NCBI RefSeq assembly: GCF_006345805.1 | Contig: NC_043011.1 | Span: 31,136,464-31,200,463, forward strand | DNA length: 64,000 nucleotides | Origin: Octopus sinensis | Taxonomy: Eukaryota | Reading direction: 5' to 3' | In this document: positions 21,358-63,179 of the stretch, piece after piece | Position numbering within the stretch: position 1 is the stretch's first letter | Layout: each line of letters opens with the position of its first letter | The notes under the pieces: generated by a model | Told to the model about the DNA's origin: nothing | The model's database searches: none | Seen by the model: the letters and a program-made list of their open reading frames with translations, nothing else | Position numbers and translations under genes: made by a program

Positions 21358-21836
21358 AGGAGTGGTTGTGTGGTAAGTAGCTTGCTTATGAACCACATGC
21401 TTCCGGGTTCAGTCCCACTGTGTGACACCTTGGGCAAGTGTCTTCTACTATAGTCTTGGGCCGACCAAAGCCTTGTGAGTGGATTTGGTAGACAGAAACT
21501 GAAAGAGGCCTGTCGTATATATGTATATACATATACTTTATTCAAAAGCAGCAGAAAATTCAACAAAACCTGTTACTCTGAGTTTCACGTTCCTGTTCGT
21601 CGGACAGTTTTTGCTATATATATATGTATGAGTGTGTATATGTTTGTCCCCCCAACATCGCTTGTCAACCGATGCTGGTGTGTTTAGGTCCCCCGTAACT
21701 TAGCAGTTCGGCAAAAGAGACCGATTGAATAAGTACTAGGCTTACAAAGAATAAGTCCTGGGGTCGATTTGCTCGACTAAAGGCAGTGCTCCAGCATGGC
21801 CACAGTCAAATGACTGAAACAAGTAAAAGAGTAAAA
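21358..21836 (+). mobile_element. tRNA-derived SINE with internal (TA/TG)n and (GTAAAAGA)n tail
   Basis: Highly similar to copies at 23156 (-), 44115, 52398 and 53672. Confidence 0.8.
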
Positions 21837-22884: not shown

Positions 22885-23155
22885 GACGAAAGTATTAATA
22901 GTGAAACTATTAAAACTGAAAAATATCTCACATTACAGTAGAAATGTTAGTTTCACTCTTGACATGTAATACTGAAATAGTGTACGAGATAAGAGATTGC
23001 TCCGGGCTCGCATTAGACAAGAAGTTGAAAAACTTTTGGCCCATGACACTCATGGTCCCTAAGTAAGGCATGTGTAAAATTTGAATGAAATCAGTTGAGT
23101 AGTTCTCGAGTGCGCACATAGAAGCAGACTGACATTCTCAGTTTTATGCGTATAT

Positions 23156-23561
23156 ACTCTTTCTCTCTCTTTTACTTGTTTCAGTCATTTGACTGCGGCC
23201 ATGCTGGAGCACCACCTTTAGTCGAACAAATCAACCCCGGGACTTATTCTTTGTAAGCCCAGTACTTATTCTATCGCTCTTTTTTGCCGAATCGCTAAGT
23301 GACGGCGACGTAAACACACCAGCATTGGTTGTCAAGCAATACTAGAGGGACAAACACAGACAAACACATATATATATATATACATACATATATACGACGG
23401 GCTTCTTTCAGTTTCCGTCTACCAAATCTACTCACAAGGCTTTGGTCGGCCTGAGAGGCTATAGTAGAAGACACTTGCCCAAGATGCCACGCACTGGGAT
23501 TGAACCCAGAACCATGTGGTTGGTAAGCAAGCTACTTACCACACAGCCACTCCTGCGCCTA
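23156..23561 (-). mobile_element. tRNA-derived SINE
   Basis: Reverse complement of the 21358 family. Confidence 0.8.
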
Positions 23562-27763: not shown

Positions 27764-45456
<17,693 letters not shown>

Positions 45457-50130: not shown

Positions 50131-50702
50131 TTGACCTGGTGCACTGCCTAAGAACCAAAGCTTGCAATGGTGCTAATGCTCAGACCCATATTGGAGTATG
50201 GGATTCAGGCCTCTTCTCCTTATCTCCTCAAAGACATACAGCATCTCGAAAGAGTCCAGAGGCTGGCTACCCGCATGGTTCATGGTCTCAAAAATTTGTC
50301 CTACGAAGAAAGGCTGAGGACGCTCGACCTTTATTCTCTTGAAAAACGCCGCCGCCGTGGTGATATCATTCTCGCCCACAACATTATAAGCGGAAAGTGT
50401 AACCTCTCGAAAGAGCTGTTCTTCACTCCTGCTCCAGAGCGTCGGCTGCGGGGTCATTCCGAAAAGCTCTACCTGCGACGATTTCATCTCAATCGAAGGA
50501 GAGGAGCTTTCTCCGTCCGGGTTGCGGATCCGTGGAACAAGCTGCCAGACGAGATGGTGAAGATGCCGACGACCGCTTTGTTCAAAGCCTCCCTGGACCT
50601 CAAGTGGCCTGAACTCTTTACATGAACACCACCCTGTACTTAACTCCATGTCCCCCTACATGGCCTTGCTATTTGCTTTTGAGCCAAATTAACTAACTAA
50701 CT
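50131..50702 (+). mobile_element. 5'-truncated CR1-type LINE with open ORF2 C-terminus (50167-50625) and (CTAA)n tail
   Basis: RPILEYGIQASSPYLLKDIQHLERVQRLATRMV...RRRRGDII...RGHSEKL...FSVRVADPWNKLP. Confidence 0.9.
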
Positions 50703-50793: not shown

Positions 50794-50850
50794 TTACTTT
50801 GCACCAGTTGATCCAAAACCTCCCTCGCCTCGCAAGGTATCGTCCAAACT
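50794..50850 (-). CDS. DUT: DUT last exon (motif 5)
   Basis: SLDDTLRGEGGFGSTGAK*. Confidence 0.92.
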   Translation of the reverse strand, partial: SLDDTLRGEGGFGSTGAK

Positions 50851-53393
50851 CTGAAAAATAGAAGGATAAGAAAATCAAAATCAAGATTTACATGTTGTCT
50901 GAAAAATATATTGAAAGAAAAAAAAAAAAATCTATAACAGAGCAAGTAAATTCAATAAAGAACAATAGTTAACCAACTTACTACACACTCTTCCAGTTCT
51001 GCAGTGAATATCCTCTCTAACACTAGCTGGGCAACACGGTCCCCTTTGTTGACTGAGATACAAAACATCAAATAAATAAAACAATTACTTTTACTAAAGT
51101 ATAAAAAAAACAGAAAGATCAGATCAGTTATATTGGGAAATAAAGAAAAGTAAAATAATAAAATGATTTTTTCTTTATTCTCATTACATGGAAAAAAGAA
51201 ATACAACCTACCTTTGAAATCAGTCTCAGAAAAATTGAAAAGAAGAACACCAACATTTCCTCTGTAATCTTGATCAATAACTCCAGCTGAAAGGAGAAAC
51301 AAAGACAGCTGTAATTCTTTTTTGAAGCACCAACTTGATGTTTGATTAACTTCAGAAACGCATACTCCCACCTCTTTTTATTACACAAATGTAAATATGG
51401 ACTTCTATACAAGAAAATCGTATTATGGTATCAGTCACATTGGAGATAATGCTTGTGACAATTTTATTAACATAGTAACCCAATTTTGCTTACATGGTTG
51501 GTAGACTGGTCAATACAATGTGTGTAACCAAGTAATAACTTCGATTTGATATCACATGGTAATACAGAAGAGAACTTACCTCCAACATCAATGAAATGCT
51601 TTAAAGCCAGTCCTGAACGAGGAGCTACAAAATAAAAATACAGTCCATCAGGTAAGATACTGACTAGGTAAAAACTGACAAAAAAACAAGCAACCTGATA
51701 CTGATCACATTATCTTGTCATAGCTTAATATTTATTTTGCTATGTTGCCGAGCAAGGTAGATAATAACCAGCCCCAGCTCTTCTGATCTGGATGAGTGAT
51801 CAATAAAAACATTCGTATTATTCTACTGACTATTAGAGCTATTACCACCTAAAGACCCCCTTCGGTCATGAATGACCATGGGATTGCACCTAGAAAGTTA
51901 CCCTCCTAGACACAAGTTCGGGCAAGGTTGTTTATGGAAGACCAGCAGTCGCCCATGCATACCAGCCTCCCCTCTCCACACCACCAGTGTTATCCAAGGG
52001 AAAGACAAAGGTCGATACAGCTTGGCACCAGTGACGTCGCAACTCATTTCTACAGCTGAGTGAACTGGAGCAACGTGAAATAAAGTGCCTTGCTCAAGAA
52101 CACAACACCCAGCCCGGTCCGGGATTCGAGCTCACAACCTCACAATCGTAAGCTCGACGCTCTAACCACTGAGCCATGCGCCTTCACTATATTACCACCA
52201 GCGACGGCTGAAAACAAAATTTTCAATTAATAATCTAAAAATTGGTTGCAATAGTACTTGGTCAACAATTTCATCATAACAGCTGGATGTGATTCCTACT
52301 ACCAGGAAATAATCAAAGAAGTAGAAATGGAACAACTTGTTTTAAAAACAGGTCCAAGTACACAAAGGAGTTTATTTGCTTAAGTAATTTAAAACAAGCA
52401 GGAGTGGCTGTGTAGCTTGCTAACCAACCACATGGTTCCGGGTTCAGTCCCACTGTGTGGCATCTTGGGCAAGTGTCTTCTACTATGGCCCCGGGCCGAC
52501 CAATGCCTTGTGAGTGGATTTGGTAGACGGAAACTGAAAGAAGCCTGTCATATATATGTATATATATGTGTGTGTTTGTCCCCCTAGCATTGCTTGACAA
52601 CCGATGCTGGTGTGTTTACGTCCCCGTCACTTAGCGGTTCGGCAAAAGAGACCGATAGAATAAATACTGGGCTTACAAAGAATAAGTCCCGGGGTTGATT
52701 CGCTCGACTAAAGGCGGTGCTCCAGCATGGCCGCAGTCAAATGACTGAAACAAGTAAAAGAGTAAGCATAACAACCTGAAAATATTTGTGTTGAACTACA
52801 CTAATGAGGGGAAATCTAGAATCTAGATATTTGCTCAAATAACCATTTGACTGATAAAAATGGCTTGCTTCCATCTTATAATTCTGCTTGTTCCTCCATT
52901 ACTCAGCCTGTCTGCAATGTTTTCACATGATCAGTTGAAGAGGGAAGGGAGGAGAGATGAGGGAGAGAGGTGGTTGTGAGCAAGGAACTAAGTTTTTTTT
53001 CTCCGTTACTTAGCCTGTCTGTAACACTTTCACTGATTAGTTGAAGGGTAAAGCGAATAATGAAAGAAAAGGGAGAAAAAGAAGGTAAGGTAAATAGTGA
53101 GCGTGCTGAGTATTAAGTAATCATGGTATTCCAGTTTCCTTTACTTTTCAATCATTAGCAGATGAGCGACTATCTTTTGATAGAAACAACACAGGCTATG
53201 CTTTCAGGTTTACTGTTAATTCTGTGAAATATTTATGGGTTCTGCTAGTAGGTAATATTTTACAAGGGAAATGAAGTCAATACAATTAGTTTATAACTTA
53301 CCCACTCTTCCATAACAGCCTTCAGGTAAAGCTATCTGGAGATCTGTTTTGGCTAGCAATTTTCCTTTAGAAGGGACTGTGTACTCATATGCA
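50794..53393 (-). CDS. DUT: dUTP pyrophosphatase (dUTPase), 3' five coding exons: 53302-53393, 51580-51624, 51212-51286, 50982-51052, 50794-50850; 5' exon not found
   Basis: Spliced: (S)[112 protein letters not shown]. Contains motifs 2-5; exon phases are consistent. Confidence 0.95.
50982..51052 (-). CDS. DUT: DUT exon (motif 4)
   Basis: (V)[23 protein letters not shown]. Confidence 0.93.
51212..51286 (-). CDS. DUT: DUT exon (motif 3)
   Basis: (A)[24 protein letters not shown]. Confidence 0.94.
51580..51624 (-). CDS. DUT: DUT exon (motif 2)
   Basis: (A)[14 protein letters not shown]. Confidence 0.93.
51850..52189 (-). mobile_element. Full-length tRNA-derived SINE with 10-bp TSD in a DUT intron
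   Basis: tattaccacc at 51840-51849 and 52190-52199 flanks a complete copy. Confidence 0.85.
52398..52765 (+). mobile_element. tRNA-derived SINE
   Basis: Same family as 21358. Confidence 0.8.
53302..53393 (-). CDS. DUT: DUT exon
   Basis: gttttag|T GCA TAT GAG...AGA GTG G|gtaagt = (S)[30 protein letters not shown]. Confidence 0.93.
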
Positions 53394-53671: not shown

Positions 53672-54018
53672 GGTGCAGGAGTGGCTGTGTGGTAAGTAGC
53701 TTGCTTACCAACCACATGGTTCCGGGTTCAGTCCCACTGCGTGGCATCTTGGGCAAGTGTCTTCTACTATAGCCTCGGGCCGACCAAAGCCTTGTCAGTG
53801 GATTTGGTAGACGGAAACTGTAAGAAGCCCGTCGTATATATGTATATATATATGTGTGTGTGTTTGTCCCCCCAACATCGCTTGACAACCGATGCTGGTG
53901 TGTTTACGTGCCCGTAACATAGCGGTTCGTCAAAAGAGACCGATAGAATAAGTACTAAAGGCGGTGCTCCAGCATGGCCGCAGTCAAATGACTGAAACAA
54001 GTAAAAGAGTAAAGAGTA
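53672..54018 (+). mobile_element. tRNA-derived SINE
   Basis: Same family as 21358. Confidence 0.8.
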
Positions 54019-55223: not shown

Positions 55224-55363
55224 ACACACACGTTCATACAAAACGTATACATATATATGGAAGCCCCCGCACACACACGTTCATACAAAACGTATACATA
55301 TATATGGAAGCCCCCAACACACACACGTTCATACAAAACATATGTATGGAAGCCCACACACAC
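55224..55363. repeat. 47-bp tandem repeat, about 3 copies
   Basis: acacacacgttcatacaaaacgtatacatatatatggaagcccc repeated. Confidence 0.9.
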
Positions 55364-55688
55364 AAGTAATCTCATTCATTCATACACATAATAAAGTGGG
55401 CGAAGAAATGTATCGTACATACTAGATGTAGTCTACACATCTTTCTGCACAGCGTGTGCATGTATTATCATTATTGATTTTTATCATTCCTATATCAATT
55501 TAATTTCCTAGAAATTATATGCTAATACTTTTTTTAAAGATAGCATTTGCTTTATGCCTATCTAGTTTAGTAAACCACTTTCGGGTAAACACGCCGTTTA
55601 ATTTCATTCACTTCGGACCTGCATTAACAGAGATACAAATGCAGAGGCGTAATGTTAAGTTTTGAGTATCCAGACCCATTGATCGAAA

Positions 55689-58203
55689 CGTAATTTATCG
55701 AAAACAAATGAACGAAAAAGCAATTGATGGAAATAACACTTATTCGAATAAAAAAGTAATCGAATTATAAATATTAAAACAATTTTGTTTTTTAAAAGGT
55801 TTATAATGGTTTTATTAATACCATCTTTTTAAAATTTAAAACGTTTATGTGCGCGCGTGCGTATGCATCATATTTACGTCCCTTTGTCCCGAGATCGATG
55901 ATATTGAAAAATGGCTGAATTTGTACCAAAAGAAAAAGGAAACCCCTTGTTATTATTCAATGGATACTTGTTCGTCAAAGAGAAGGAAGCTGGAAACAGA
56001 ACGTATTGGAAGTGCCAGAATTATAATAAGCACTGTAACTGTCGTGCCAAAACCGCTGGTGGTGAGATTATTTCTGTTTCCTGTGAACATAATCATACTG
56101 CTAATCCAGCTAAGGTCGAAGCGCGCCGAATTGCGAAAACAGTCAAGACTGAACCCGAAGAAACACCTAACTCACCCCAGTTTGTAATTTCAAATGTAGC
56201 TTCACATAATAGCACTGTTACAACTCCAGTACTACCTTTACATAATCATACAGTTATTCCAGCTAATGTCGAAGCGCCCCAACTTACGGGAAAAGTCAAG
56301 ATAGAACTTGAAACATGTGACTCTTCACCTCCGCATGTAGTTTCAACTGTAGCTTCAGATAACAGATTTGCTTCAACTCCAGTACTACCCTCAGTAAGTA
56401 ACATGAAACGAACAATTCAACAAGTACCTCGAGAAAAAAGAGCCAAATGTAGTAAAGATTTTCCAGAGGACCCTACCAAAACTAAAAAAGCTAAATTTGT
56501 TCAAAGCGAAAAAGGAAAACCTATGTTGTTAGTAGATGGATATTTGTTTGTTAAAGACAAGGAATTGAAAAATAAAAAATATTGGAAGTGTCAGAATTAT
56601 AAAAAATATTGTAAATGTCGTGCCAAGACAGATGGGGATGAGGTCATTTCAGTTTCTGGAGAACATAACCATGCCGGTAATCCAGTTAATGTTGAAGTGC
56701 GGCGATTTATGGAAAAAATTAAGAATGACTCTAAAGAAACTCACGATTCACCTCAATATGTAATTTTAAATGCTGCTTCAGATATTAGTAATCTAACAGT
56801 TCCCGCACTACCCCCGCTTAGTAGTATAAAACGGACGATTCGACGAGTGCGCCAACGAGAAATTTGCGGGTTACCTGTACCCAACCATAGAAAAGACATA
56901 ACCTTTCTTGACGAATATACCAAAACAAATAGGGGAGACGACTTCCTGTTGTTTGATTCGGGCCCAAGTGAAGACAGAATGTTGATATTTTCGACCCGAC
57001 AAAATCTGTATGTTCTTGATTCGTGTCAAAATGTCTTCATGGATGGCTCCTTTAAAACAGTGCCGGTAATATTTGATCAACTCTATACAATTCAAGGTCT
57101 TAAAAATGGATTTTGTCTTCCTTTGATATTTGGATTGTTACCCAATAGGAAAGAAGAAACGTACATTAAATTTGTTAAGACAGTAAAAACACTAGTACTG
57201 TTTTCAAACATTGATTCAATTACTACAGACTTTGAACCGACAATGATAAAGGCTGTCAGGACAGAATTCGATTCCGTTAATCTGTATGGTAGTTTTTTTC
57301 ATTTAGGGCATTGCCTATACAAAAAGGTATGCGCCTTCGATCTAAAAGAGAAATACAACACAGATGCACATTTTTCACTAAGTATTCGCATGCTTTTAGC
57401 TCTAGCTTTTGTTCCAACAGAGCAAGTGTATGATGCATTTGGAGCGCTAGTAGATGAAGCGGTATATCCTCCAGAGGCCCTTCCAGTAGTTGACTATTTC
57501 GAAGACACGTGGCTAGGACGACCATGTATTCGCAATGGTCGCCGTCCACCTATATTTGACTTAAAGATGTGGTCCTGTTTTGACAGAGTGCAACAGAATT
57601 TACCAGAAACAAATAACGCTATTGAAGTATGGCACCGAGCATTTTTGCATCAAGTCTCGGCGAACCGGTCAACAATTTGGAGATTTATAGAAGAGCTGAA
57701 GAGAGAACAATCTTTGAACGAGATTAATATAGAAAAATTACTCAGCGGAATGGAGTGCGAATCAAATACTAAAGAATGTCGCATTTCTGCCAAGCAACTT
57801 AAAAAACTCACTGAATCGTTTCAAGAATACACCAATGTAGTCGACTATCTATGCGCAGTAGCTCATAACGTGAGACTATAACGCTTTTTATAATTTTTTA
57901 CATCAGCTAAATAAATAGTTTGTAGAACGAAAACATTTGCACCTTTTTTAAATATTGATTCAGTTTCTTGTGACTTTGAACGAGCTATGACAAAAGGCCA
58001 CAGGTTTTCAGACTATCAACACCACACACATTATATACAACTTCATTCTAAAAATAAAAAAACACGACAATGTAATTTCCGCCCTTCAATCCTTTCTATA
58101 TTTCTAAAATCTGTTAATAATTCGACTAATTGTTGAATCGAGCAACTGCTACTTCGAACAACTGTCTTGTTTTTCGTTTAGCCATTTTCGATAAATTGCC
58201 ACG
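55689..58203 (+). mobile_element. Mutator-like (FLYWCH/MULE) element with decayed TIRs (about 55689-55772 and 58113-58203)
   Basis: The two flanks align as reverse complements at about 60/81 positions (manual count) and contain repeated TCGAA sub-motifs. No TSD recognised. Confidence 0.7.
55911..57881 (+). CDS. Intact 656-aa protein: two FLYWCH zinc fingers plus MULE DDE transposase domain (possibly domesticated)
   Basis: Two LL.(N/D)GYLF...YWKC...C.CRA...HNH motifs; MDGSFKTVP..FDQLYTI, TDFE and TNNAIEVWH catalytic motifs. Single exon, good start context, AATAAA at 57910-57915. Confidence 0.9.
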   Translation: MAEFVPKEKGNPLLLFNGYLFVKEKEAGNRTYWKCQNYNKHCNCRAKTAGGEIISVSCEHNHTANPAKVEARRIAKTVKTEPEETPNSPQFVISNVASHNSTVTTPVLPLHNHTVIPANVEAPQLTGKVKIELETCDSSPPHVVSTVASDNRFASTPVLPSVSNMKRTIQQVPREKRAKCSKDFPEDPTKTKKAKFVQSEKGKPMLLVDGYLFVKDKELKNKKYWKCQNYKKYCKCRAKTDGDEVISVSGEHNHAGNPVNVEVRRFMEKIKNDSKETHDSPQYVILNAASDISNLTVPALPPLSSIKRTIRRVRQREICGLPVPNHRKDITFLDEYTKTNRGDDFLLFDSGPSEDRMLIFSTRQNLYVLDSCQNVFMDGSFKTVPVIFDQLYTIQGLKNGFCLPLIFGLLPNRKEETYIKFVKTVKTLVLFSNIDSITTDFEPTMIKAVRTEFDSVNLYGSFFHLGHCLYKKVCAFDLKEKYNTDAHFSLSIRMLLALAFVPTEQVYDAFGALVDEAVYPPEALPVVDYFEDTWLGRPCIRNGRRPPIFDLKMWSCFDRVQQNLPETNNAIEVWHRAFLHQVSANRSTIWRFIEELKREQSLNEINIEKLLSGMECESNTKECRISAKQLKKLTESFQEYTNVVDYLCAVAHNVRL

Positions 58204-58479
58204 TAGTTTTTCTTTGTATTTATTTTCGTTCACTTACATTTTCCTGACAACCAGCTAAAATAGGCAACAACACATTGCTTGTACACTGCTAGCAGTAGAA
58301 AGCATTATATCACCTCATATTACAATCAACTTTTTAAATCTTAAAACTTCTGACATTTTAGAAGTTTTCAAAGTAAACGGAGTTAGCTCCCTTGTGACAG
58401 CAGTAACCAGACAAAACGTTTCTTTTCCATGTAATAATTTTCCGCTTATTTTTAGCAGTTCATGATTTTTTTTCTAGAT

Positions 58480-59319: not shown

Positions 59320-62038
59320 CTGTTGGCATCCTTTTTGTCTCGGGAGACAATGGAGTTGCGCTTAAAATAATCTAGACCGGCTTTTACATTTCATGTCCTA
59401 ATACATCTCCTGCTGTGGCTGTGTAGTCCTATCCTGGACAAACACTCCCTCTGGCGGGTGCCGCAAATGTAGCGAAGACTGTTCCTGGCTGGTTGTAATG
59501 TCTTAGTTTCTTGTTGACGTCTTGTCTTGTCTTTCTTGTCTTGTCTTGCCTTGCCAATGTGTATATTGAGCTCAGCATCAAGGGATAGGTTGTAGGTGAC
59601 GGTAGAGCCAAGATAGGTAAACTTCTCCACCTCCTGTAATCTGTGGTCTCCAATATGTATGTTTAGGATGTCCAATGTAGCCTGACCCATGATGTTGGTC
59701 TTCTTGAGGCTGATAACTAAGCCAAAGTCGTTACATGCTTGCTCAAAACAGTTGATGAGCCTTTGTAGGGCTTCTGTGTGTGATACCAGAGTGGCATCAT
59801 CAGCAAATAGCATCTCCTTGATCAGGATGCTTCTGATTTTGGTCTTGGCACACAGGCATGAGAGATTGAACAGTTTCCCGTCACTTCTACTGTGCAGAAA
59901 CACTCCATCATCTGATGTCTGAAAGGCATGTGAGAGCAGCAGCGAGAAGATGCCAAATAATGTAGGAGCAAGGACACCTTGCTTTACCCTGTTTTTTATT
60001 TGGAAGGTGGCTGATGTTGAACCATTGTGCTGTATGGTGCCTTGCATATCATCATAGAAAGCTTTGATGATCCTCAGCAGCTTTGGTGGACATCCGATTT
60101 TTTGAAGCAGGATGAAGAGGCCTTTCCTACTTACCAAGTCAAAGGCCTTTGTCAGATCAATGAAGGCCATATATAATGGCATTTTCTGCTCTCCTGAAGT
60201 TGGCATATGGAGAATATCATGTCAATAGTTGATCTGCTTCTTCTAAAGCCACACTGCGATTCTGGATAAATTCGAGAAGCAAGCAGTTGTAGCCTGGACA
60301 GGATAACGCAAGCAAAGGTCTTTCCAACAGTAATTGTTACAATCACCACGGTCACCTTTGTTCTTGTAAAGCGTAATCATGTTAGCATCCTGCATATCCT
60401 GAGGGACTGTACCCTCTTTCCAGCACTGACACAGAAGCTCATGAAGGTGCCAAAGCAGGATGGTGTTCTTGCCGGCTTTGATGATCTGTGAGGGGATGCC
60501 ATCTTTTCCCGGGGCCTTGTTACTTGCTAGGGAGTCAATAGTCTTGGTGAGCTCTGCTATAGATGGTGGACTGTCAAGATATTGACACTCTCGATTGCAG
60601 CCTCAGCTACCATGGTCTCTCGTGAGTAGAGATCCTGGTAGTACTCCACCCATCTATCCATTTGCTTGCTTTGGTCCTTGATGAGATCTCTAGTAGTTGA
60701 TTTCAGAGGGGCTGACTTGGTTGCGGATGGACCGATGGCCTTCTTCAAACTGGCATACATCCCATGGGTGTCGCCAGCCGACTGGATACTGACAGATTTC
60801 CTGCCAATACCTATTTGCACAGCATCAGGCTGTCAGTTGGGTTTTATTTCTTGCCTTTCTGAGTTCTTCGAGTGACTTTGTAGAAGAATCACTCTTGTAT
60901 TGAATCAGAGCTGCACGGTTTGCTTCGATAACTGCTTCCAGCACTGAACCAATCTGGGTTTTGCCTTTCTCTCATGCCGAAAGTATCTATTGATGTGGTA
61001 TACAAAGCTTCCCTGATATAATTCCACCTACTTTCAGCAGAAGAGGTTGGGCAGCTAGAGGGCAACCTTGATAGAAACAGCAAAACATTTTTGCAGTGTA
61101 GGGTCCGAGGTTCTGGCAGTGTTAATGCGTGGTCGGCCCATTTTCTTGGAGTGATGGACTTTTTAAGGCAGAATCCTCACCCTGCTTCTAATTAGTGAGT
61201 GATCTGTGTCACAATCCGCGCTGTGGTAACTACAGGTCAGTTGAACAGAATTCAGAAAGGATCTTCGTGTAATGATGAAATCCAGCTGATGCCAGTGGTG
61301 AGATCTTGGATGTCTCCAAGATGCCTTGTTGGCAAAGAATGTGTTGGTGATGCACAGGTTATGGTATGTACAAAATTCAAGTAGTCTCTGACCATTGTCA
61401 TTCATGTTGCCAATACCAAAGTGTCAAACACACATGGGCCACGAATCATGGTCAGATCCCACGCGAGCGTTAAAATCTCCTAGAAGGTAGATGTTTTCAT
61501 TGGTTAGTATATTTTTAATGACACAGTTGAGATCTTTGTAGAACTGGTCCTTGGTCTCCTCTGAGTTGTAGAGAGTGGGAGCATAGATGCTCAATAGATG
61601 TACTGAACCAGATGTCAAGAGGCGCAGTGAGAGGATACGCTCAGTGCCTCCTGATGGTGGTTCTATTGAGGAGAATAATGAGTTTCTCACTGCAAAGCCA
61701 ACATCATGCTGACGAGGTTCTTCTGGATCGCTTCCCTGCCAAAAGAAGGTGAAATCCTGTTCTTTGAGTTTGCCGTTTGAGGGGAGTCTTGTCTCCTGCA
61801 GCCCAGCAACGTCATCAGATATAACAGGGCACATGGTCCTGACATTCCAGCTTGCTAACCACAGGACTGGTGGTTTGTCTTTTAGTTGTTTGCCGGATTT
61901 CTTTGAAGGTTGTCTCCTTTCCGTAACCCTGGATAGGGGCCCATACCGGGTACTGTCAGCCGGAGCCAGCTGAGCCCGGGACTCGTGTCAGGCAGGGTCG
62001 TCACTCCCTGAAGTAGTGAAGAAGTTCGCTACCCACTA
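59320..62038 (-). mobile_element. Near full-length degenerate RTE-clade LINE (APE endonuclease + RT), frameshifted
   Basis: LQETRL, SIYAPTL, LGDFNARVG and SDH-region APE motifs; QCGFR..RSTIDMIF, AFIDLTKAFD and LFADD RT motifs; terminal SRIGLHSHSRRC. Confidence 0.93.
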
Positions 62039-62047
62039 CCTTTTCAA

Positions 62048-62271
62048 GTAATGTTAAATTATTATCAAATTTTTCATTTTTTTAATTGTTATTTATATAT
62101 TTATTTTTAACCACTAATCTGCTATTACCACTGCCTCTGCTACTGCTGAAAATGATATTGCTGCTGCTGCTAATGATAAATGCGGGGCCCCTGTATGAAA
62201 ATTAGTGGTTAAAAATAAATATATAAATAACATTAAAAAAAAAGAAGAAAAATTTAATAATTTAACATTAC
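62048..62271. repeat. Short inverted repeat (71-bp arms 62048-62118 and 62201-62271), MITE-like
   Basis: gtaatgttaaattatt...ttttaaccactaat versus attagtggttaaaa...aataatttaacattac. Confidence 0.8.
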
Positions 62272-63179
62272 TGTCCTTCATCTAGGCTCGCAAAATTACA
62301 CGAAAACGTATAACTAATGTTCTAAACGACCAGTCACAATCACCTTCCTCCGAGAGCATTAGATTAATTAAATCATAACTGCGCCACAAGCTGGACTAAA
62401 AGTATTTCACCCAACGACACAGAAAATTGAATTAACAAAATCAACATTCTAACTGCACGCCAAAATATGCCATATGTAGCTACTGGCTGGCAAAGAAATC
62501 GCTGAAAAGAAAAATCCAGAAACTGAAAGAAAACGTCTTTTTTTCTATTTTATTAAAACCTTAAAACTAAAACATTACTAACCATATCGTATGGCAATGT
62601 CTAAGACAAGGTATGAATGTCGAATACGTTACGTTTGTGGATGAATACAATTTGTAAAAAAAAAAAAAAAAAAAAAAGGGCGAAAACACAAGACGATAGC
62701 TGCTTATTGTGGAGACTTTGGAAAATAACATTTTCCACGATAATAAGCAGCTCCACTGTATTTTAAAAAGTATTTTCGTTTGATAGTACTTATATGTGAA
62801 TTGAATGAAAGTAAACTTCAATTGTAAAAACTTTATATGATAATTTAGGTTACAGAAATTCTAAATCAAAACAAAATTCGGCGCGAACACGGTAACGTAC
62901 TGTCGCTCACAATTCATTCATCAATATACTTTCCCGCTGTCTGTAAGTGTTTACCTAACATACTAAAAATAGCAGGTAATCAAACTTTAAATAGTTTTAG
63001 CTGCTGTTTTTTTGTATGTTCGACGACCATCTAAAGGCCTCCATCTTCGGGCTAAAAAAGCTGGACTATGGCGGGAAAGTATGATTTCGCGGTTTATCTT
63101 CAATGGTCTTCTTCCACATAAGTACCACTGCCCTTGCCATTAATTAATGAAAATATTTCTTGACAATAACAGTAAATAT

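What the first reader, a model, noticed from the sequence alone, without database searches (positions are those of the whole stretch)
55689..58203. Candidate domesticated Mutator transposase: intact 656-aa ORF between TIRs decayed to about 74% identity
Seen: an uninterrupted single-exon ORF with all three presumed catalytic acidic residues (DGSF, TDFE, NNAIE), a good start context and AATAAA 30 nt after the stop. The flanks 55689-55772 and 58113-58203 are recognisable inverted repeats matching at only about 60/81 positions, and no TSD is evident. The other transposase- and RT-bearing elements in the window are truncated or frameshifted. Known: TIRs of a recently mobile element are near-identical, and FLYWCH/MULE genes have been domesticated repeatedly (plant FAR1/FHY3 and MUSTANG). 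Inference: the element was immobilised long ago and its ORF has been kept by purifying selection as a host gene.
Basis: partly seen in the sequence, partly recalled or inferred. Interest (0 to 1): 0.8.

Follow-up and report, generated by a model that had tools for sequence, protein, structure and literature searches.

The report
Domesticated Mutator transposase gene in octopus
An ancient "jumping gene" that landed inside an intron of the octopus dUTPase gene stopped moving, and at least three octopus species have kept it as an ordinary protein-coding gene, apparently together with its own end sequences; this is a solid but not unprecedented case of a host taming a transposon.

Summary
Window 55911-57881 (+) is an intact 656-aa ORF with two FLYWCH zinc fingers and a MULE/IS256-type DDE core. 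It lies between real but imperfect inverted repeats (55691-55771 / 58114-58198, 60/80 matches). No TSD is detectable.

The domestication reading is strongly supported. The window is from assembly GCA_006345805.1, which I recall as Octopus sinensis. The ORF lies antisense in a dUTPase intron. O. bimaculoides has an intact 659-aa ortholog (XP_014769500.1) in the same intron. A third, more distant octopod has an intact 654-aa copy whose similarity runs about 200 bp past both TIRs.

- Ortholog dN/dS is 0.17-0.27 overall, about 0.02 for FLYWCH2, and below 1 on each branch.
- The ORF has 3 in-frame indels where about 55 are expected.
- The family's invariant CxxH cysteine is serine in all three octopods, and the histidine is also lost in the third species. 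The DDE triad is kept.

Their left-right asymmetry predates the three species. They are more conserved than synonymous sites, and all nine NCGA(A) motifs are invariant. The same TTCGAAAAC motif builds the TIRs of a mobile relative.

The O. bimaculoides ortholog was already listed as a TE-derived FLYWCH factor (PMC10027918). Copy number and expression remain untested.

The parts
55691..55771 (+). Left relic TIR. It carries four NCGAA motifs (ATCGAAAAC, AACGAAAAA, TTCGAATAA, ATCGAATTA).
   Evidence: Aligns to the right arm with score 51 vs null max 33. 72-76 of 81 positions are identical between species.
55772..55910 (+). Leader between the TIR and the ATG. Two blocks are identical in all three species (GTGCGCGCGTGCG at 55849-55861; GTCCCTTTGTCCCGAGATCGA at 55878-55898). 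They are candidate core promoter or 5' UTR (inferred).
   Evidence: Three-species alignment.
55911..57881 (+). Single-exon ORF of 656 aa plus stop: FLYWCH1, disordered linker, FLYWCH2, MULE DDE core, helical C-terminus.
   Evidence: dN/dS.
55911..56096 (+). FLYWCH zinc finger 1 (aa 1-62). It belongs to an N-terminal module duplicated in tandem (55908-56236 resembles 56484-56812 at 73.9% nt identity).
   Evidence: Pfam. Self-BLAST. pLDDT 83-91. omega about 0.09-0.18.
56097..56483 (+). Low-confidence (disordered) linker, with an internal repeat of about 150 nt (56087-56236 resembles 56240-56389). All three between-species indels fall here and all are in frame.
   Evidence: pLDDT below 50 for aa 78-190.. 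omega about 0.43.
56484..56672 (+). FLYWCH zinc finger 2 (aa 192-254). It corresponds to the single finger of all relatives and is the most constrained part of the protein.
   Evidence: omega 0.015-0.028 for aa 192-325. Invariant W225, C227, C234, H252, N253, H254. Fold match to human FLYWCH1 domain 2rpr, TMt 0.75.
56928..57656 (+). MULE/IS256-type RNase-H-like DDE core (about aa 340-582). Catalytic D378 is at 57042-57044, D440 at 57228-57230 and E572 at 57624-57626. The degenerate CxxH motif reads S461 (57291-57293) and H464 (57300-57302).
   Evidence: Fold match to ISCth4 and Hermes transposases. omega 0.17-0.20.
57882..58113 (+). 3' trailer. It is poorly conserved and indel-rich. AATAAA at 57910-57915 is not conserved.
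58114..58198 (-). Right relic TIR, with five NCGA(A) motifs when read inward. It is 85/85 identical between O. sinensis and O. bimaculoides.
50803..51622 (-). Context: 3' exons of the host dUTPase gene (motifs PRSG, GVIDQDYRG, DRVAQ, RGEGGFGSTG). The gene call spans window 50794 to beyond 64000, so the element lies antisense in one of its introns.
   Evidence: Gene calls. Motif scan.

Best explanation
This is a fossil Phantom/Muta-type Mutator-like element (MULE). It inserted, antisense, into an intron of the dUTPase gene before the last common ancestor of O. sinensis, O. bimaculoides and a third, more distant octopod.

Shown:
- The element has stayed at that site.
- Its transposase ORF has been kept intact by protein-level purifying selection on every branch.
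- It acquired a second FLYWCH module by tandem duplication.
- Its CxxH motif is degenerate while the DDE triad is kept.
- Its two ends are themselves conserved, including every NCGA(A) motif.

Inferred mechanism: the protein now works for the host as a sequence-specific DNA-binding factor. FLYWCH2, and less strictly FLYWCH1, would recognise TCGAA-type motifs, the repeat unit of the TIRs in mobile relatives. The RNase-H-like core would be kept as a structural or oligomerisation module, or as a catalytically crippled one, rather than as a working cut-and-paste enzyme. The conserved relic TIRs most likely serve as cis elements of the gene, either as promoter/terminator or as autoregulatory binding sites for its own product.
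For: Orthology and synteny:
- The exact protein maps to GCA_006345805.1 chromosome CM016873.1, inside a dUTPase gene on the opposite strand.
- O. bimaculoides XP_014769500.1 (659 aa, 93% identity) lies in the same place in its dUTPase gene. DNA is colinear over 55319-58440 at 92.7% and in the surrounding intron.
- Identical contigs from four sequencing runs of a third species align to 55497-58421 at 83.8%, past both TIRs.

Selection on the ORF:
- Pairwise dN/dS is 0.17-0.27 (NG86 and ML); dS is 0.12 and about 0.3.
- Codon-position differences are 53/34/123.
- Branch-specific nonsynonymous:synonymous counts are 17:23, 13:19 and 47:81, against a neutral expectation of 78% nonsynonymous. Each has P<1e-5.
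- Non-coding DNA shows 22 indel events per 788 nt. That predicts about 55 in the ORF; 3 are observed, all in frame, P about 4e-20.

Family membership:
- Pfam FLYWCH x2 plus MULE.
- 13,882 representative clusters, typically about 465 aa with one FLYWCH.
- The AF2 model (pLDDT 77.8) best matches the IS256-family ISCth4 transposase, a FLYWCH domain and Hermes.

Loss of a transposition hallmark:
- The Cys of GCFFH is present in 25 of 25 relatives but is Ser in all three octopods. The His is Asn in the third species.
- Of only 6 changes at 67 highly conserved columns, 3 fall in residues 461-467.
- In Muta1, H307A in this motif cuts transposition by 99.5% (PMC5225508).

TIRs:
- 24 left-vs-right mismatches are fixed in all three species.
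- TCGAA/TTCGA occurs 8 times in 166 nt against 0.16 expected.
- 148/166 TIR columns are invariant, against 556/788 in other non-coding DNA (P 2e-7) and 77% of third codon positions. All 27 bases of the nine CGA cores are invariant.
- A mobile relative (L007) has 93%-identical TIRs built of TTCGAAAAC repeats and a 10-bp TSD.
Against: - No expression, protein or binding data were available here.
- Genome-wide copy number could not be measured. The window and the protein databases show none, but degenerate or MITE copies would be invisible to them.
- The third species is unidentified, and only about 200 bp of flank on each side supports its orthology.
- The DDE triad, the conserved Trp and 61 of 67 family-conserved positions are retained. 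Core omega is about 0.2, so residual catalytic activity cannot be excluded.
- Serine for cysteine is a conservative change whose effect has not been measured.
- The Pfam MULE score is marginally below the gathering threshold.
- TIR conservation rests on 166 nt.
Confidence: 0.8

Rival explanations
1. A domesticated but still catalytically active recombinase or nuclease. The protein and its own conserved ends would form a working pair that the host uses for a programmed DNA event (nick, break, excision or circle formation, or synapsis) at the dUTPase intron or at NCGAA-rich sites elsewhere. Kat1 acting on fossil hAT ends, PiggyMac and RAG/RSS are the analogies.
For: - The DDE triad is invariant, and W554, W574 and H575 are conserved.
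- Core omega is about 0.2, not relaxed.
- Both TIRs, and every CGA motif in them, are conserved beyond synonymous sites.
- Changes are confined to the CxxH stretch rather than spread over the core. That could mean altered rather than lost chemistry.
Against: - The CxxH Cys is lost in all three species and the His is lost in one. H-to-A in Muta1 removes 99.5% of activity.
- The element is still at the same site in three lineages.
- The arms are only 70-80% alike, with a 4-nt indel.
- No TSD or excision footprint was seen.
Confidence: 0.12
2. An ordinary autonomous transposon copy that is still mobile, or died only recently, and whose ORF is intact by chance or through selection among TE copies.
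For: The ORF and DDE triad are intact and the TIRs are recognisable. The family is a large, clearly mobile TE family elsewhere.
Against: - The same insertion site occurs in three species separated by dS of about 0.12-0.35, with the ORF open in all.
- omega is about 0.2 on each terminal branch, which TE-level selection cannot produce at one fixed locus.
- There is no TSD, the TIRs are 75% identical, and no second copy was found.
Confidence: 0.03
3. The conservation reflects a non-coding role. Examples are an antisense or intronic regulatory element of dUTPase, or an intronic inverted repeat forming RNA structure. The ORF would be incidental.
For: The element is nested antisense in a housekeeping gene. 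The TIRs and two leader blocks are conserved.
Against: - Substitutions concentrate at third codon positions, 53/34/123.
- All ORF indels are in frame.
- omega varies by protein domain, 0.02 in FLYWCH2 against 0.4 in the linker.
- No compensatory left/right changes occur in the arms.
Confidence: 0.03

Closest known systems
Octopus bimaculoides LOC106868647 / XP_014769500.1 ('Ob_68647')
   Same: This is the direct ortholog. It is 93% identical, 659 aa, has the same 2xFLYWCH+MULE architecture, and lies in the same dUTPase intron and orientation. Mukherjee & Moroz 2023 (PMC10027918, supplementary file 1) used it as the FLYWCH+MULE probe and count it among 'potentially TE-derived TFs'.
   Different: That paper reports family-level Ka/Ks and no synteny (no occurrence of 'synten' in its main text). 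I found no mention there of TIRs, the dUTPase location, ortholog-based dN/dS or the CxxH change.
Phantom/Muta-type MULE transposons (e.g. Muta1 of Aedes aegypti; Phantom group 20 of Dupeyron et al. 2019)
   Same: N-terminal FLYWCH finger plus a MULE DDE core with a CxxH motif and conserved Trp. TIRs carry subterminal repeats. TSD is 8-10 bp (PMC5225508, PMC6446971). The relative L007 shows all of these, with TTCGAAAAC repeats.
   Different: The octopus copy is fixed at one orthologous locus and has no TSD. Its TIRs are 75% identical, it has a second FLYWCH module, and it reads SxxH (SxxN in one species) instead of CxxH. Direct sequence comparison with Muta1 or Phantom was not done; the assignment rests on architecture and on relatives from crustaceans and springtails.
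Plant FHY3/FAR1 and MUSTANG (MULE-derived host genes)
   Same: A MULE transposase retained as a stationary host gene under purifying selection, with a WRKY/FLYWCH-fold N-terminal DNA-binding domain plus the transposase core (background from PMC6446971, PMC1702500 and PMC10027918).
   Different: An independent event in animals from a different MULE clade. Function is unknown here, and the relic TIRs are still recognisable and conserved.
Kluyveromyces lactis alpha3 (MULE-like) and Kat1 (hAT) domesticated transposases
   Same: These are domesticated transposases that kept catalysis for a host DNA event. Kat1 acts on fossil TIR imprints (PMC4763223, PMC4629796). They are the precedent for the minority reading that protein and ends are retained together.
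   Different: K. lactis alpha3 is reported not to be flanked by TIRs (PMC4629796). No catalytic activity is shown for the octopus gene, and its CxxH motif is degenerate.
FLYWCH-only transcription factors (human FLYWCH1, C. elegans FLH/PEB-1, Drosophila Mod(mdg4))
   Same: The same zinc-finger fold. The model matches PDB 2rpr with TMt 0.75, rmsd 1.6 A and 35% identity.
   Different: Those proteins lack the transposase core. The octopus protein keeps a full-length DDE domain.

Membership tests
Mutator-like (MULE) transposase, FLYWCH-bearing Phantom/Muta type | N-terminal FLYWCH zinc finger | tested here: met
   Pfam PF04500 E 7.4e-35, two copies. Zinc ligands are invariant. Fold match to 2rpr.
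Mutator-like (MULE) transposase, FLYWCH-bearing Phantom/Muta type | MULE/IS256-type RNase-H-like domain with a DDE triad | tested here: met
   PF10551 scores 27.2 bits, marginally under the 27.6 cutoff. However, D378, D440 and E572 align with invariant or near-invariant columns. There are 13,882 homologous clusters, and the best fold match is ISCth4 transposase.
Mutator-like (MULE) transposase, FLYWCH-bearing Phantom/Muta type | CxxH motif between the second D and the E | tested here: not met
   GSFFH in O. sinensis and O. bimaculoides and GSFFN in the third species, against GCFFH in 25 of 25 relatives for Cys and 24 of 25 for His.
Mutator-like (MULE) transposase, FLYWCH-bearing Phantom/Muta type | Terminal inverted repeats | tested here: met
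   Present and significant, but 75% identical with a 4-nt indel. They share the TCGAAAAC motif with the TIRs of relative L007.
Mutator-like (MULE) transposase, FLYWCH-bearing Phantom/Muta type | 8-11 bp target site duplication | tested here: not met
   No consistent 8-10 bp direct repeat at the termini in any of the three species.
Mutator-like (MULE) transposase, FLYWCH-bearing Phantom/Muta type | Multiple dispersed copies or evidence of mobility | tested here: inconclusive
   No other copy in the 64-kb window. One gene per genome in the protein collection, and no paralog between 60% and 87% identity. Whole-genome BLAST was not possible with these tools.
Domesticated (exapted) transposase gene | Orthologous copy at the same genomic site in different species | tested here: met
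   The same dUTPase intron in O. sinensis and O. bimaculoides. In the third species the flanks are colinear beyond both TIRs.
Domesticated (exapted) transposase gene | Purifying selection between orthologs (dN/dS well below 1) and an intact ORF | tested here: met
   omega 0.17-0.27 pairwise and 0.16-0.21 per branch, each P<1e-5. Indel deficit P about 4e-20.
Domesticated (exapted) transposase gene | Loss of mobility hallmarks | tested here: met
   No TSD. The TIR asymmetry is fixed in all three species. The CxxH motif is degenerate.
Domesticated (exapted) transposase gene | Expression and a host function | not testable with these tools
   No RNA-seq, proteome or phenotype data were accessible. 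Whether the Logan runs SRR11869385/390/391/394 are RNA or DNA could not be determined.

The most novel reading that the evidence does not exclude
The transposase and its own two ends have been retained together as a functional pair for tens of millions of years. On this reading the host gene still recognises, and perhaps nicks, synapses or excises, its own fossil TIRs inside the dUTPase intron. That would be an animal counterpart of Kat1 with its fossil imprints, or of RAG with RSS. The altered CxxH motif would have retuned the chemistry rather than killed it.
Probability: 0.1. Interest if true: 0.85.

Novelty: new member of a known kind. Interest (0 to 1): 0.5.

Why it matters
Well-documented domestications of Mutator-type transposases are mainly plant genes (FHY3/FAR1, MUSTANG) and one yeast gene (alpha3). 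In animals, FLYWCH proteins are assumed to descend from MULEs, but they usually lack the transposase core.

This locus captures an intermediate state with unusually complete anatomy:
- the transposase core, the DNA-binding fingers and both relic ends are all still present at one orthologous site;
- selection is measurable on each part;
- a mobile relative shows what the ends looked like originally.

That gives a concrete, testable system for how a transposase becomes a host factor, using FLYWCH binding to NCGAA motifs and the CxxH change. It also adds ortholog-level evidence to a gene that had only been catalogued as 'potentially TE-derived'.

It does not overturn anything. Transposase domestication is a familiar process.

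Tried and rejected
- Identifying the third species. Full-text searches for SRR11869385/390/391/394 and for the prefixes SRR118693/SRR118694 found nothing relevant; the only hit was an unrelated 7-digit accession. The species, and whether the runs are RNA or DNA, stay unknown, so I make no expression claim from them.
- A second protein search with the octopod-specific N-terminal 330 aa. It found no further octopod orthologs and no other two-FLYWCH protein.
- TSD search within about 40-45 bp of each terminus (about 35 outside and 5-9 inside the TIR) in three species. It found nothing consistent; the single 8-mer with one mismatch in O. sinensis overlaps the TIR itself and is absent from the other species.
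- The AATAAA after the stop as support for a transcription unit. Rejected, because it is deleted in O. bimaculoides.
- TIR arms as an RNA hairpin. No compensatory left/right changes occur and complementarity is only 70-80%.
- TIRs on the Tara Oceans relative L006. The contig lacks the 3' end; only 5' TTCGAA motifs were seen.
- K. lactis alpha3 as a precedent for 'domesticated MULE with TIRs'. The literature I could read says alpha3 is not TIR-flanked, so Kat1 is the better analogy.
- The bacterial promoter/terminator scanner and Rfam were not used, because they do not apply to an animal nuclear gene.
Full report
**1. What is at the coordinates.**
The region holds one uninterrupted ORF, 55911..57881 on the + strand, 656 aa, ATG start. 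Pfam gives two FLYWCH zinc fingers (E 7.4e-35). It also gives the MULE transposase domain at 27.2 bits, marginally under the 27.6 cutoff. In an alignment with 27 relatives they sit on invariant or near-invariant columns D378, D440 (with E442) and E572.

An AlphaFold2 model built on that alignment has mean pLDDT 77.8. It shows two beta-sheet fingers, a disordered stretch at aa 78-190 and a well-ordered alpha/beta core. Foldseek against the PDB returns ISCth4, an IS256-family transposase and so from the prokaryotic sister group of MULEs. It also returns a FLYWCH domain of human FLYWCH1 (TMt 0.75, rmsd 1.6 A) and the hAT transposase Hermes.

**2. The inverted repeats.**
A gapped local alignment pairs 55691-55771 with the reverse complement of 58114-58198. 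The score is 51, against 19.4 +/- 3.2 (max 33) for shuffles and 16 +/- 2.8 (max 31) for 500 equally spaced pairs from the window. No target-site duplication is detectable. No second copy of the ORF, the element or the TIRs exists in the 64-kb window.

**3. Where the window comes from, and context.**
The exact protein is on record once, on chromosome CM016873.1 of assembly GCA_006345805.1. The ORF lies inside a gene on the opposite strand whose 145-aa product hits dUTPase. I located four dUTPase motif-bearing exons on the minus strand at 50803-51622. The gene call runs from window 50794 to beyond 64000, so the element sits antisense in a dUTPase intron.

**4. Orthologs.**
The 90%-identity cluster of the protein has one other member: Octopus bimaculoides XP_014769500.1 (LOC106868647), 659 aa. 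Its locus (L008) shows the same arrangement, with the ORF antisense inside the dUTPase gene. BLASTN gives colinear similarity across the element (L008 9396-12517 = window 55319-58440, 92.7%) and through the surrounding intron.

A second relative, P0002, is 654 aa and 87-88% identical. It comes from four Logan assemblies (SRR11869385/390/391/394) as essentially identical 2.8-3.0 kb contigs. These align to window 55497-58421 at 83.8%, which is about 200 bp beyond both TIRs on each side. That copy is therefore at the orthologous site too. It is about equally distant from the other two species, so its host is an outgroup to them. I could not identify the species.

**5. Selection on the ORF.**
- Pairwise dN/dS by NG86 and ML: 0.25-0.27 for O. 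sinensis vs O. bimaculoides (dS 0.11-0.12), and 0.17-0.20 for either species vs the third (dS 0.29-0.35).
- Bootstrap 95% range for O. sinensis vs the third species: 0.13-0.24.
- Differences by codon position: 53/34/123.
- Changes assigned to single branches by parsimony, as nonsynonymous:synonymous, are 17:23 (O. sinensis), 13:19 (O. bimaculoides) and 47:81 (third species plus the internal branch). The neutral expectation is 78% nonsynonymous. Each branch has omega 0.16-0.21 and P<1e-5. Selection is therefore still acting on the lineage sampled by the window.
- Non-coding parts of the same alignment carry 22 indel events in 788 nt. That predicts about 55 in the ORF; 3 are seen, all in frame and all in the disordered linker (P about 4e-20).
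- Constraint is uneven across the protein. FLYWCH2 plus its linker (aa 192-325) has omega 0.015-0.03. The MULE core and C-terminus have 0.17-0.20. The duplicated N-terminal module has 0.25-0.5.

TE-level selection cannot maintain one fixed locus in separate species. This pattern is the classical signature of a host gene.

**6. What changed relative to mobile relatives.**
The family is very large: 13,882 clusters at 50% identity with E<=1e-3, and 928 with E<=1e-30. Its members are typically about 465 aa and start aligning at query residue about 195, so they have one FLYWCH finger. Named members come from a prawn and a springtail, and others from marine plankton metagenomes.

The octopod protein alone has a second N-terminal FLYWCH module. 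It arose from a tandem duplication of about 576 nt (55908-56236 resembles 56484-56812 at 73.9%), with a further internal repeat of about 150 nt. The duplication is shared by all three species.

Among 67 columns that are at least 90% conserved in the 25 non-octopod relatives, the octopods differ at only 6. Three of the six lie within residues 461-467:
- the Cys of the GCFFH (CxxH) motif is Ser in all three species;
- the neighbouring Gln is His in all three;
- the His itself is Asn in the third species.

In the FLYWCH-bearing MULE Muta1, alanine substitution of any DDE residue abolishes transposition, and H307A in the CxxH motif reduces it by 99.5% (PMC5225508). I infer that cut-and-paste competence is no longer what selection preserves. 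Altered or residual catalysis is not excluded, because the DDE triad and the rest of the core are kept.

**7. The ends are conserved, not decaying.**
In a six-way alignment (left and right arm from three species), 24 columns differ between the arms identically in all three species. The asymmetry therefore predates their common ancestor. A majority-rule ancestor has 62/79 matches.

Since then the arms have changed little. The right arm is 85/85 identical between O. sinensis and O. bimaculoides, while adjacent non-coding DNA is 90-92% identical. Across three species, 148/166 TIR columns are invariant, against 556/788 in the other non-coding parts (Fisher P 2e-7) and 77% of third codon positions.

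The arms are arrays of NCGA(A) motifs at matching positions: 9, 23, 55 and 71 on the left, and 9, 23, 43, 59 and 75 on the right. TCGAA/TTCGA occurs 8 times in 166 nt against 0.16 expected from the window (P 9e-12). All 27 bases of the nine CGA cores are invariant in all species, despite containing CpG (P about 8e-5 under the flank rate).

A relative with 54% protein identity (locus L007) is a bona fide transposon. It has 93%-complementary TIRs made of tandem TTCGAAAAC units, a 10-bp TSD (GTAGCATGGG) and a slightly broken ORF. A 60% relative also has TTCGAA motifs at its 5' end.

The octopus arms are thus genuine family TIRs, and the motif is the likely transposase-binding unit. That last step is an inference, by analogy with the subterminal repeats of Muta1. 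Their conservation suggests they are now cis elements of the gene. I did not see compensatory left/right changes, so an RNA-hairpin role is unlikely.

**8. Mechanism.**
- Shown: an old, immobile MULE insertion at an orthologous site. Its ORF and its ends are both under purifying selection, and the strongest constraint is on FLYWCH2.
- Inferred, most likely: the product is a sequence-specific DNA-binding host factor that recognises TCGAA-type motifs. The transposase core would serve as a scaffold or oligomerisation domain, and the relic TIRs as promoter/terminator or autoregulatory sites.
- Minority alternative, about 0.1: protein and ends are retained as an active pair for a host DNA transaction. 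This is like Kat1 and its fossil imprints in K. lactis (PMC4763223). By contrast, K. lactis alpha3, the known MULE-derived case, is reported not to be TIR-flanked (PMC4629796).

**9. Comparison with the literature.**
Dupeyron et al. 2019 place FLYWCH-bearing invertebrate MULEs in the Phantom family, with TSD of 8-10 bp (PMC6446971). Mukherjee & Moroz 2023 list FLYWCH among TE-derived transcription-factor families. They used exactly the O. bimaculoides ortholog (XP_014769500, 'Ob_68647') as their FLYWCH+MULE probe (PMC10027918). Their selection tests are family-wide, and the main text contains no synteny analysis. The gene was therefore already flagged as potentially transposon-derived. What is added here:
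- the locus anatomy (relic TIRs, dUTPase intron);
- ortholog-based selection tests;
- the CxxH change;
- the FLYWCH duplication;
- the conservation of the ends.

**10. Limits.**
- No whole-genome copy-number search was possible.
- No expression or protein evidence was available.
- The third species is unidentified and is represented by 3 kb only.
- The TIR statistics rest on 166 nt, and the non-coding comparison counts gap columns as variable.
- The Pfam MULE hit is just sub-threshold, although homology and fold leave no real doubt.

**11. Verdict.**
This is a new, well-evidenced member of a known kind, the domesticated transposase genes. Its ortholog was already catalogued. Interest is moderate (0.5).

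Noticed in passing
window 59394-60206 (-) and 61427-61834 (-); segment about 59320-62272: There are fragments of a LINE-type retrotransposon in the same dUTPase intron: a partial RVT_1 ORF of 271 aa and a partial endonuclease/exonuclease/phosphatase ORF of 136 aa. The O. bimaculoides alignment jumps from 59320 to 62272, so this looks like an insertion specific to the O. sinensis lineage.
   Followed up: partly
window 21358-21835, 23152-23560, 44109-44544, 52398-52765, 53675-54012, among others: A short interspersed repeat family of about 350-400 bp has many copies at 75-92% identity across the window. The third-species contig ends in a copy of it just beyond the right flank of the element.
   Followed up: no
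window 55849-55861 and 55878-55898: Two blocks upstream of the ATG are identical in all three octopods, inside an otherwise poorly conserved AT-rich leader: GTGCGCGCGTGCG and GTCCCTTTGTCCCGAGATCGA. They could be a core promoter or 5' UTR element. The second ends in another ATCGA motif.
   Followed up: partly
L007 1830-3983 (ENA assembly ERZ25072293): This is a near-complete mobile relative. Its TIRs are made of TTCGAAAAC repeats, it has a 10-bp TSD (GTAGCATGGG), and a long (CT)n microsatellite lies between the left TIR and the ORF. A frameshift near the C-terminus truncates the called protein to 396 aa.
   Followed up: partly
window 50167-50625 (+) and 50173-50649 (-): Two overlapping ORFs of about 150 aa lie on opposite strands just beyond the last dUTPase exon. 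Neither has a Pfam match. They may be a chance product of biased composition or the 3' UTR region.
   Followed up: no
window 50803-51622 (-): dUTPase exons carrying the motifs PRSG, GVIDQDYRG, DRVAQ and RGEGGFGSTG. The exon with the first motif (AGYDL-like) was not found by my regex, and the gene's 5' end lies beyond the window.
   Followed up: partly
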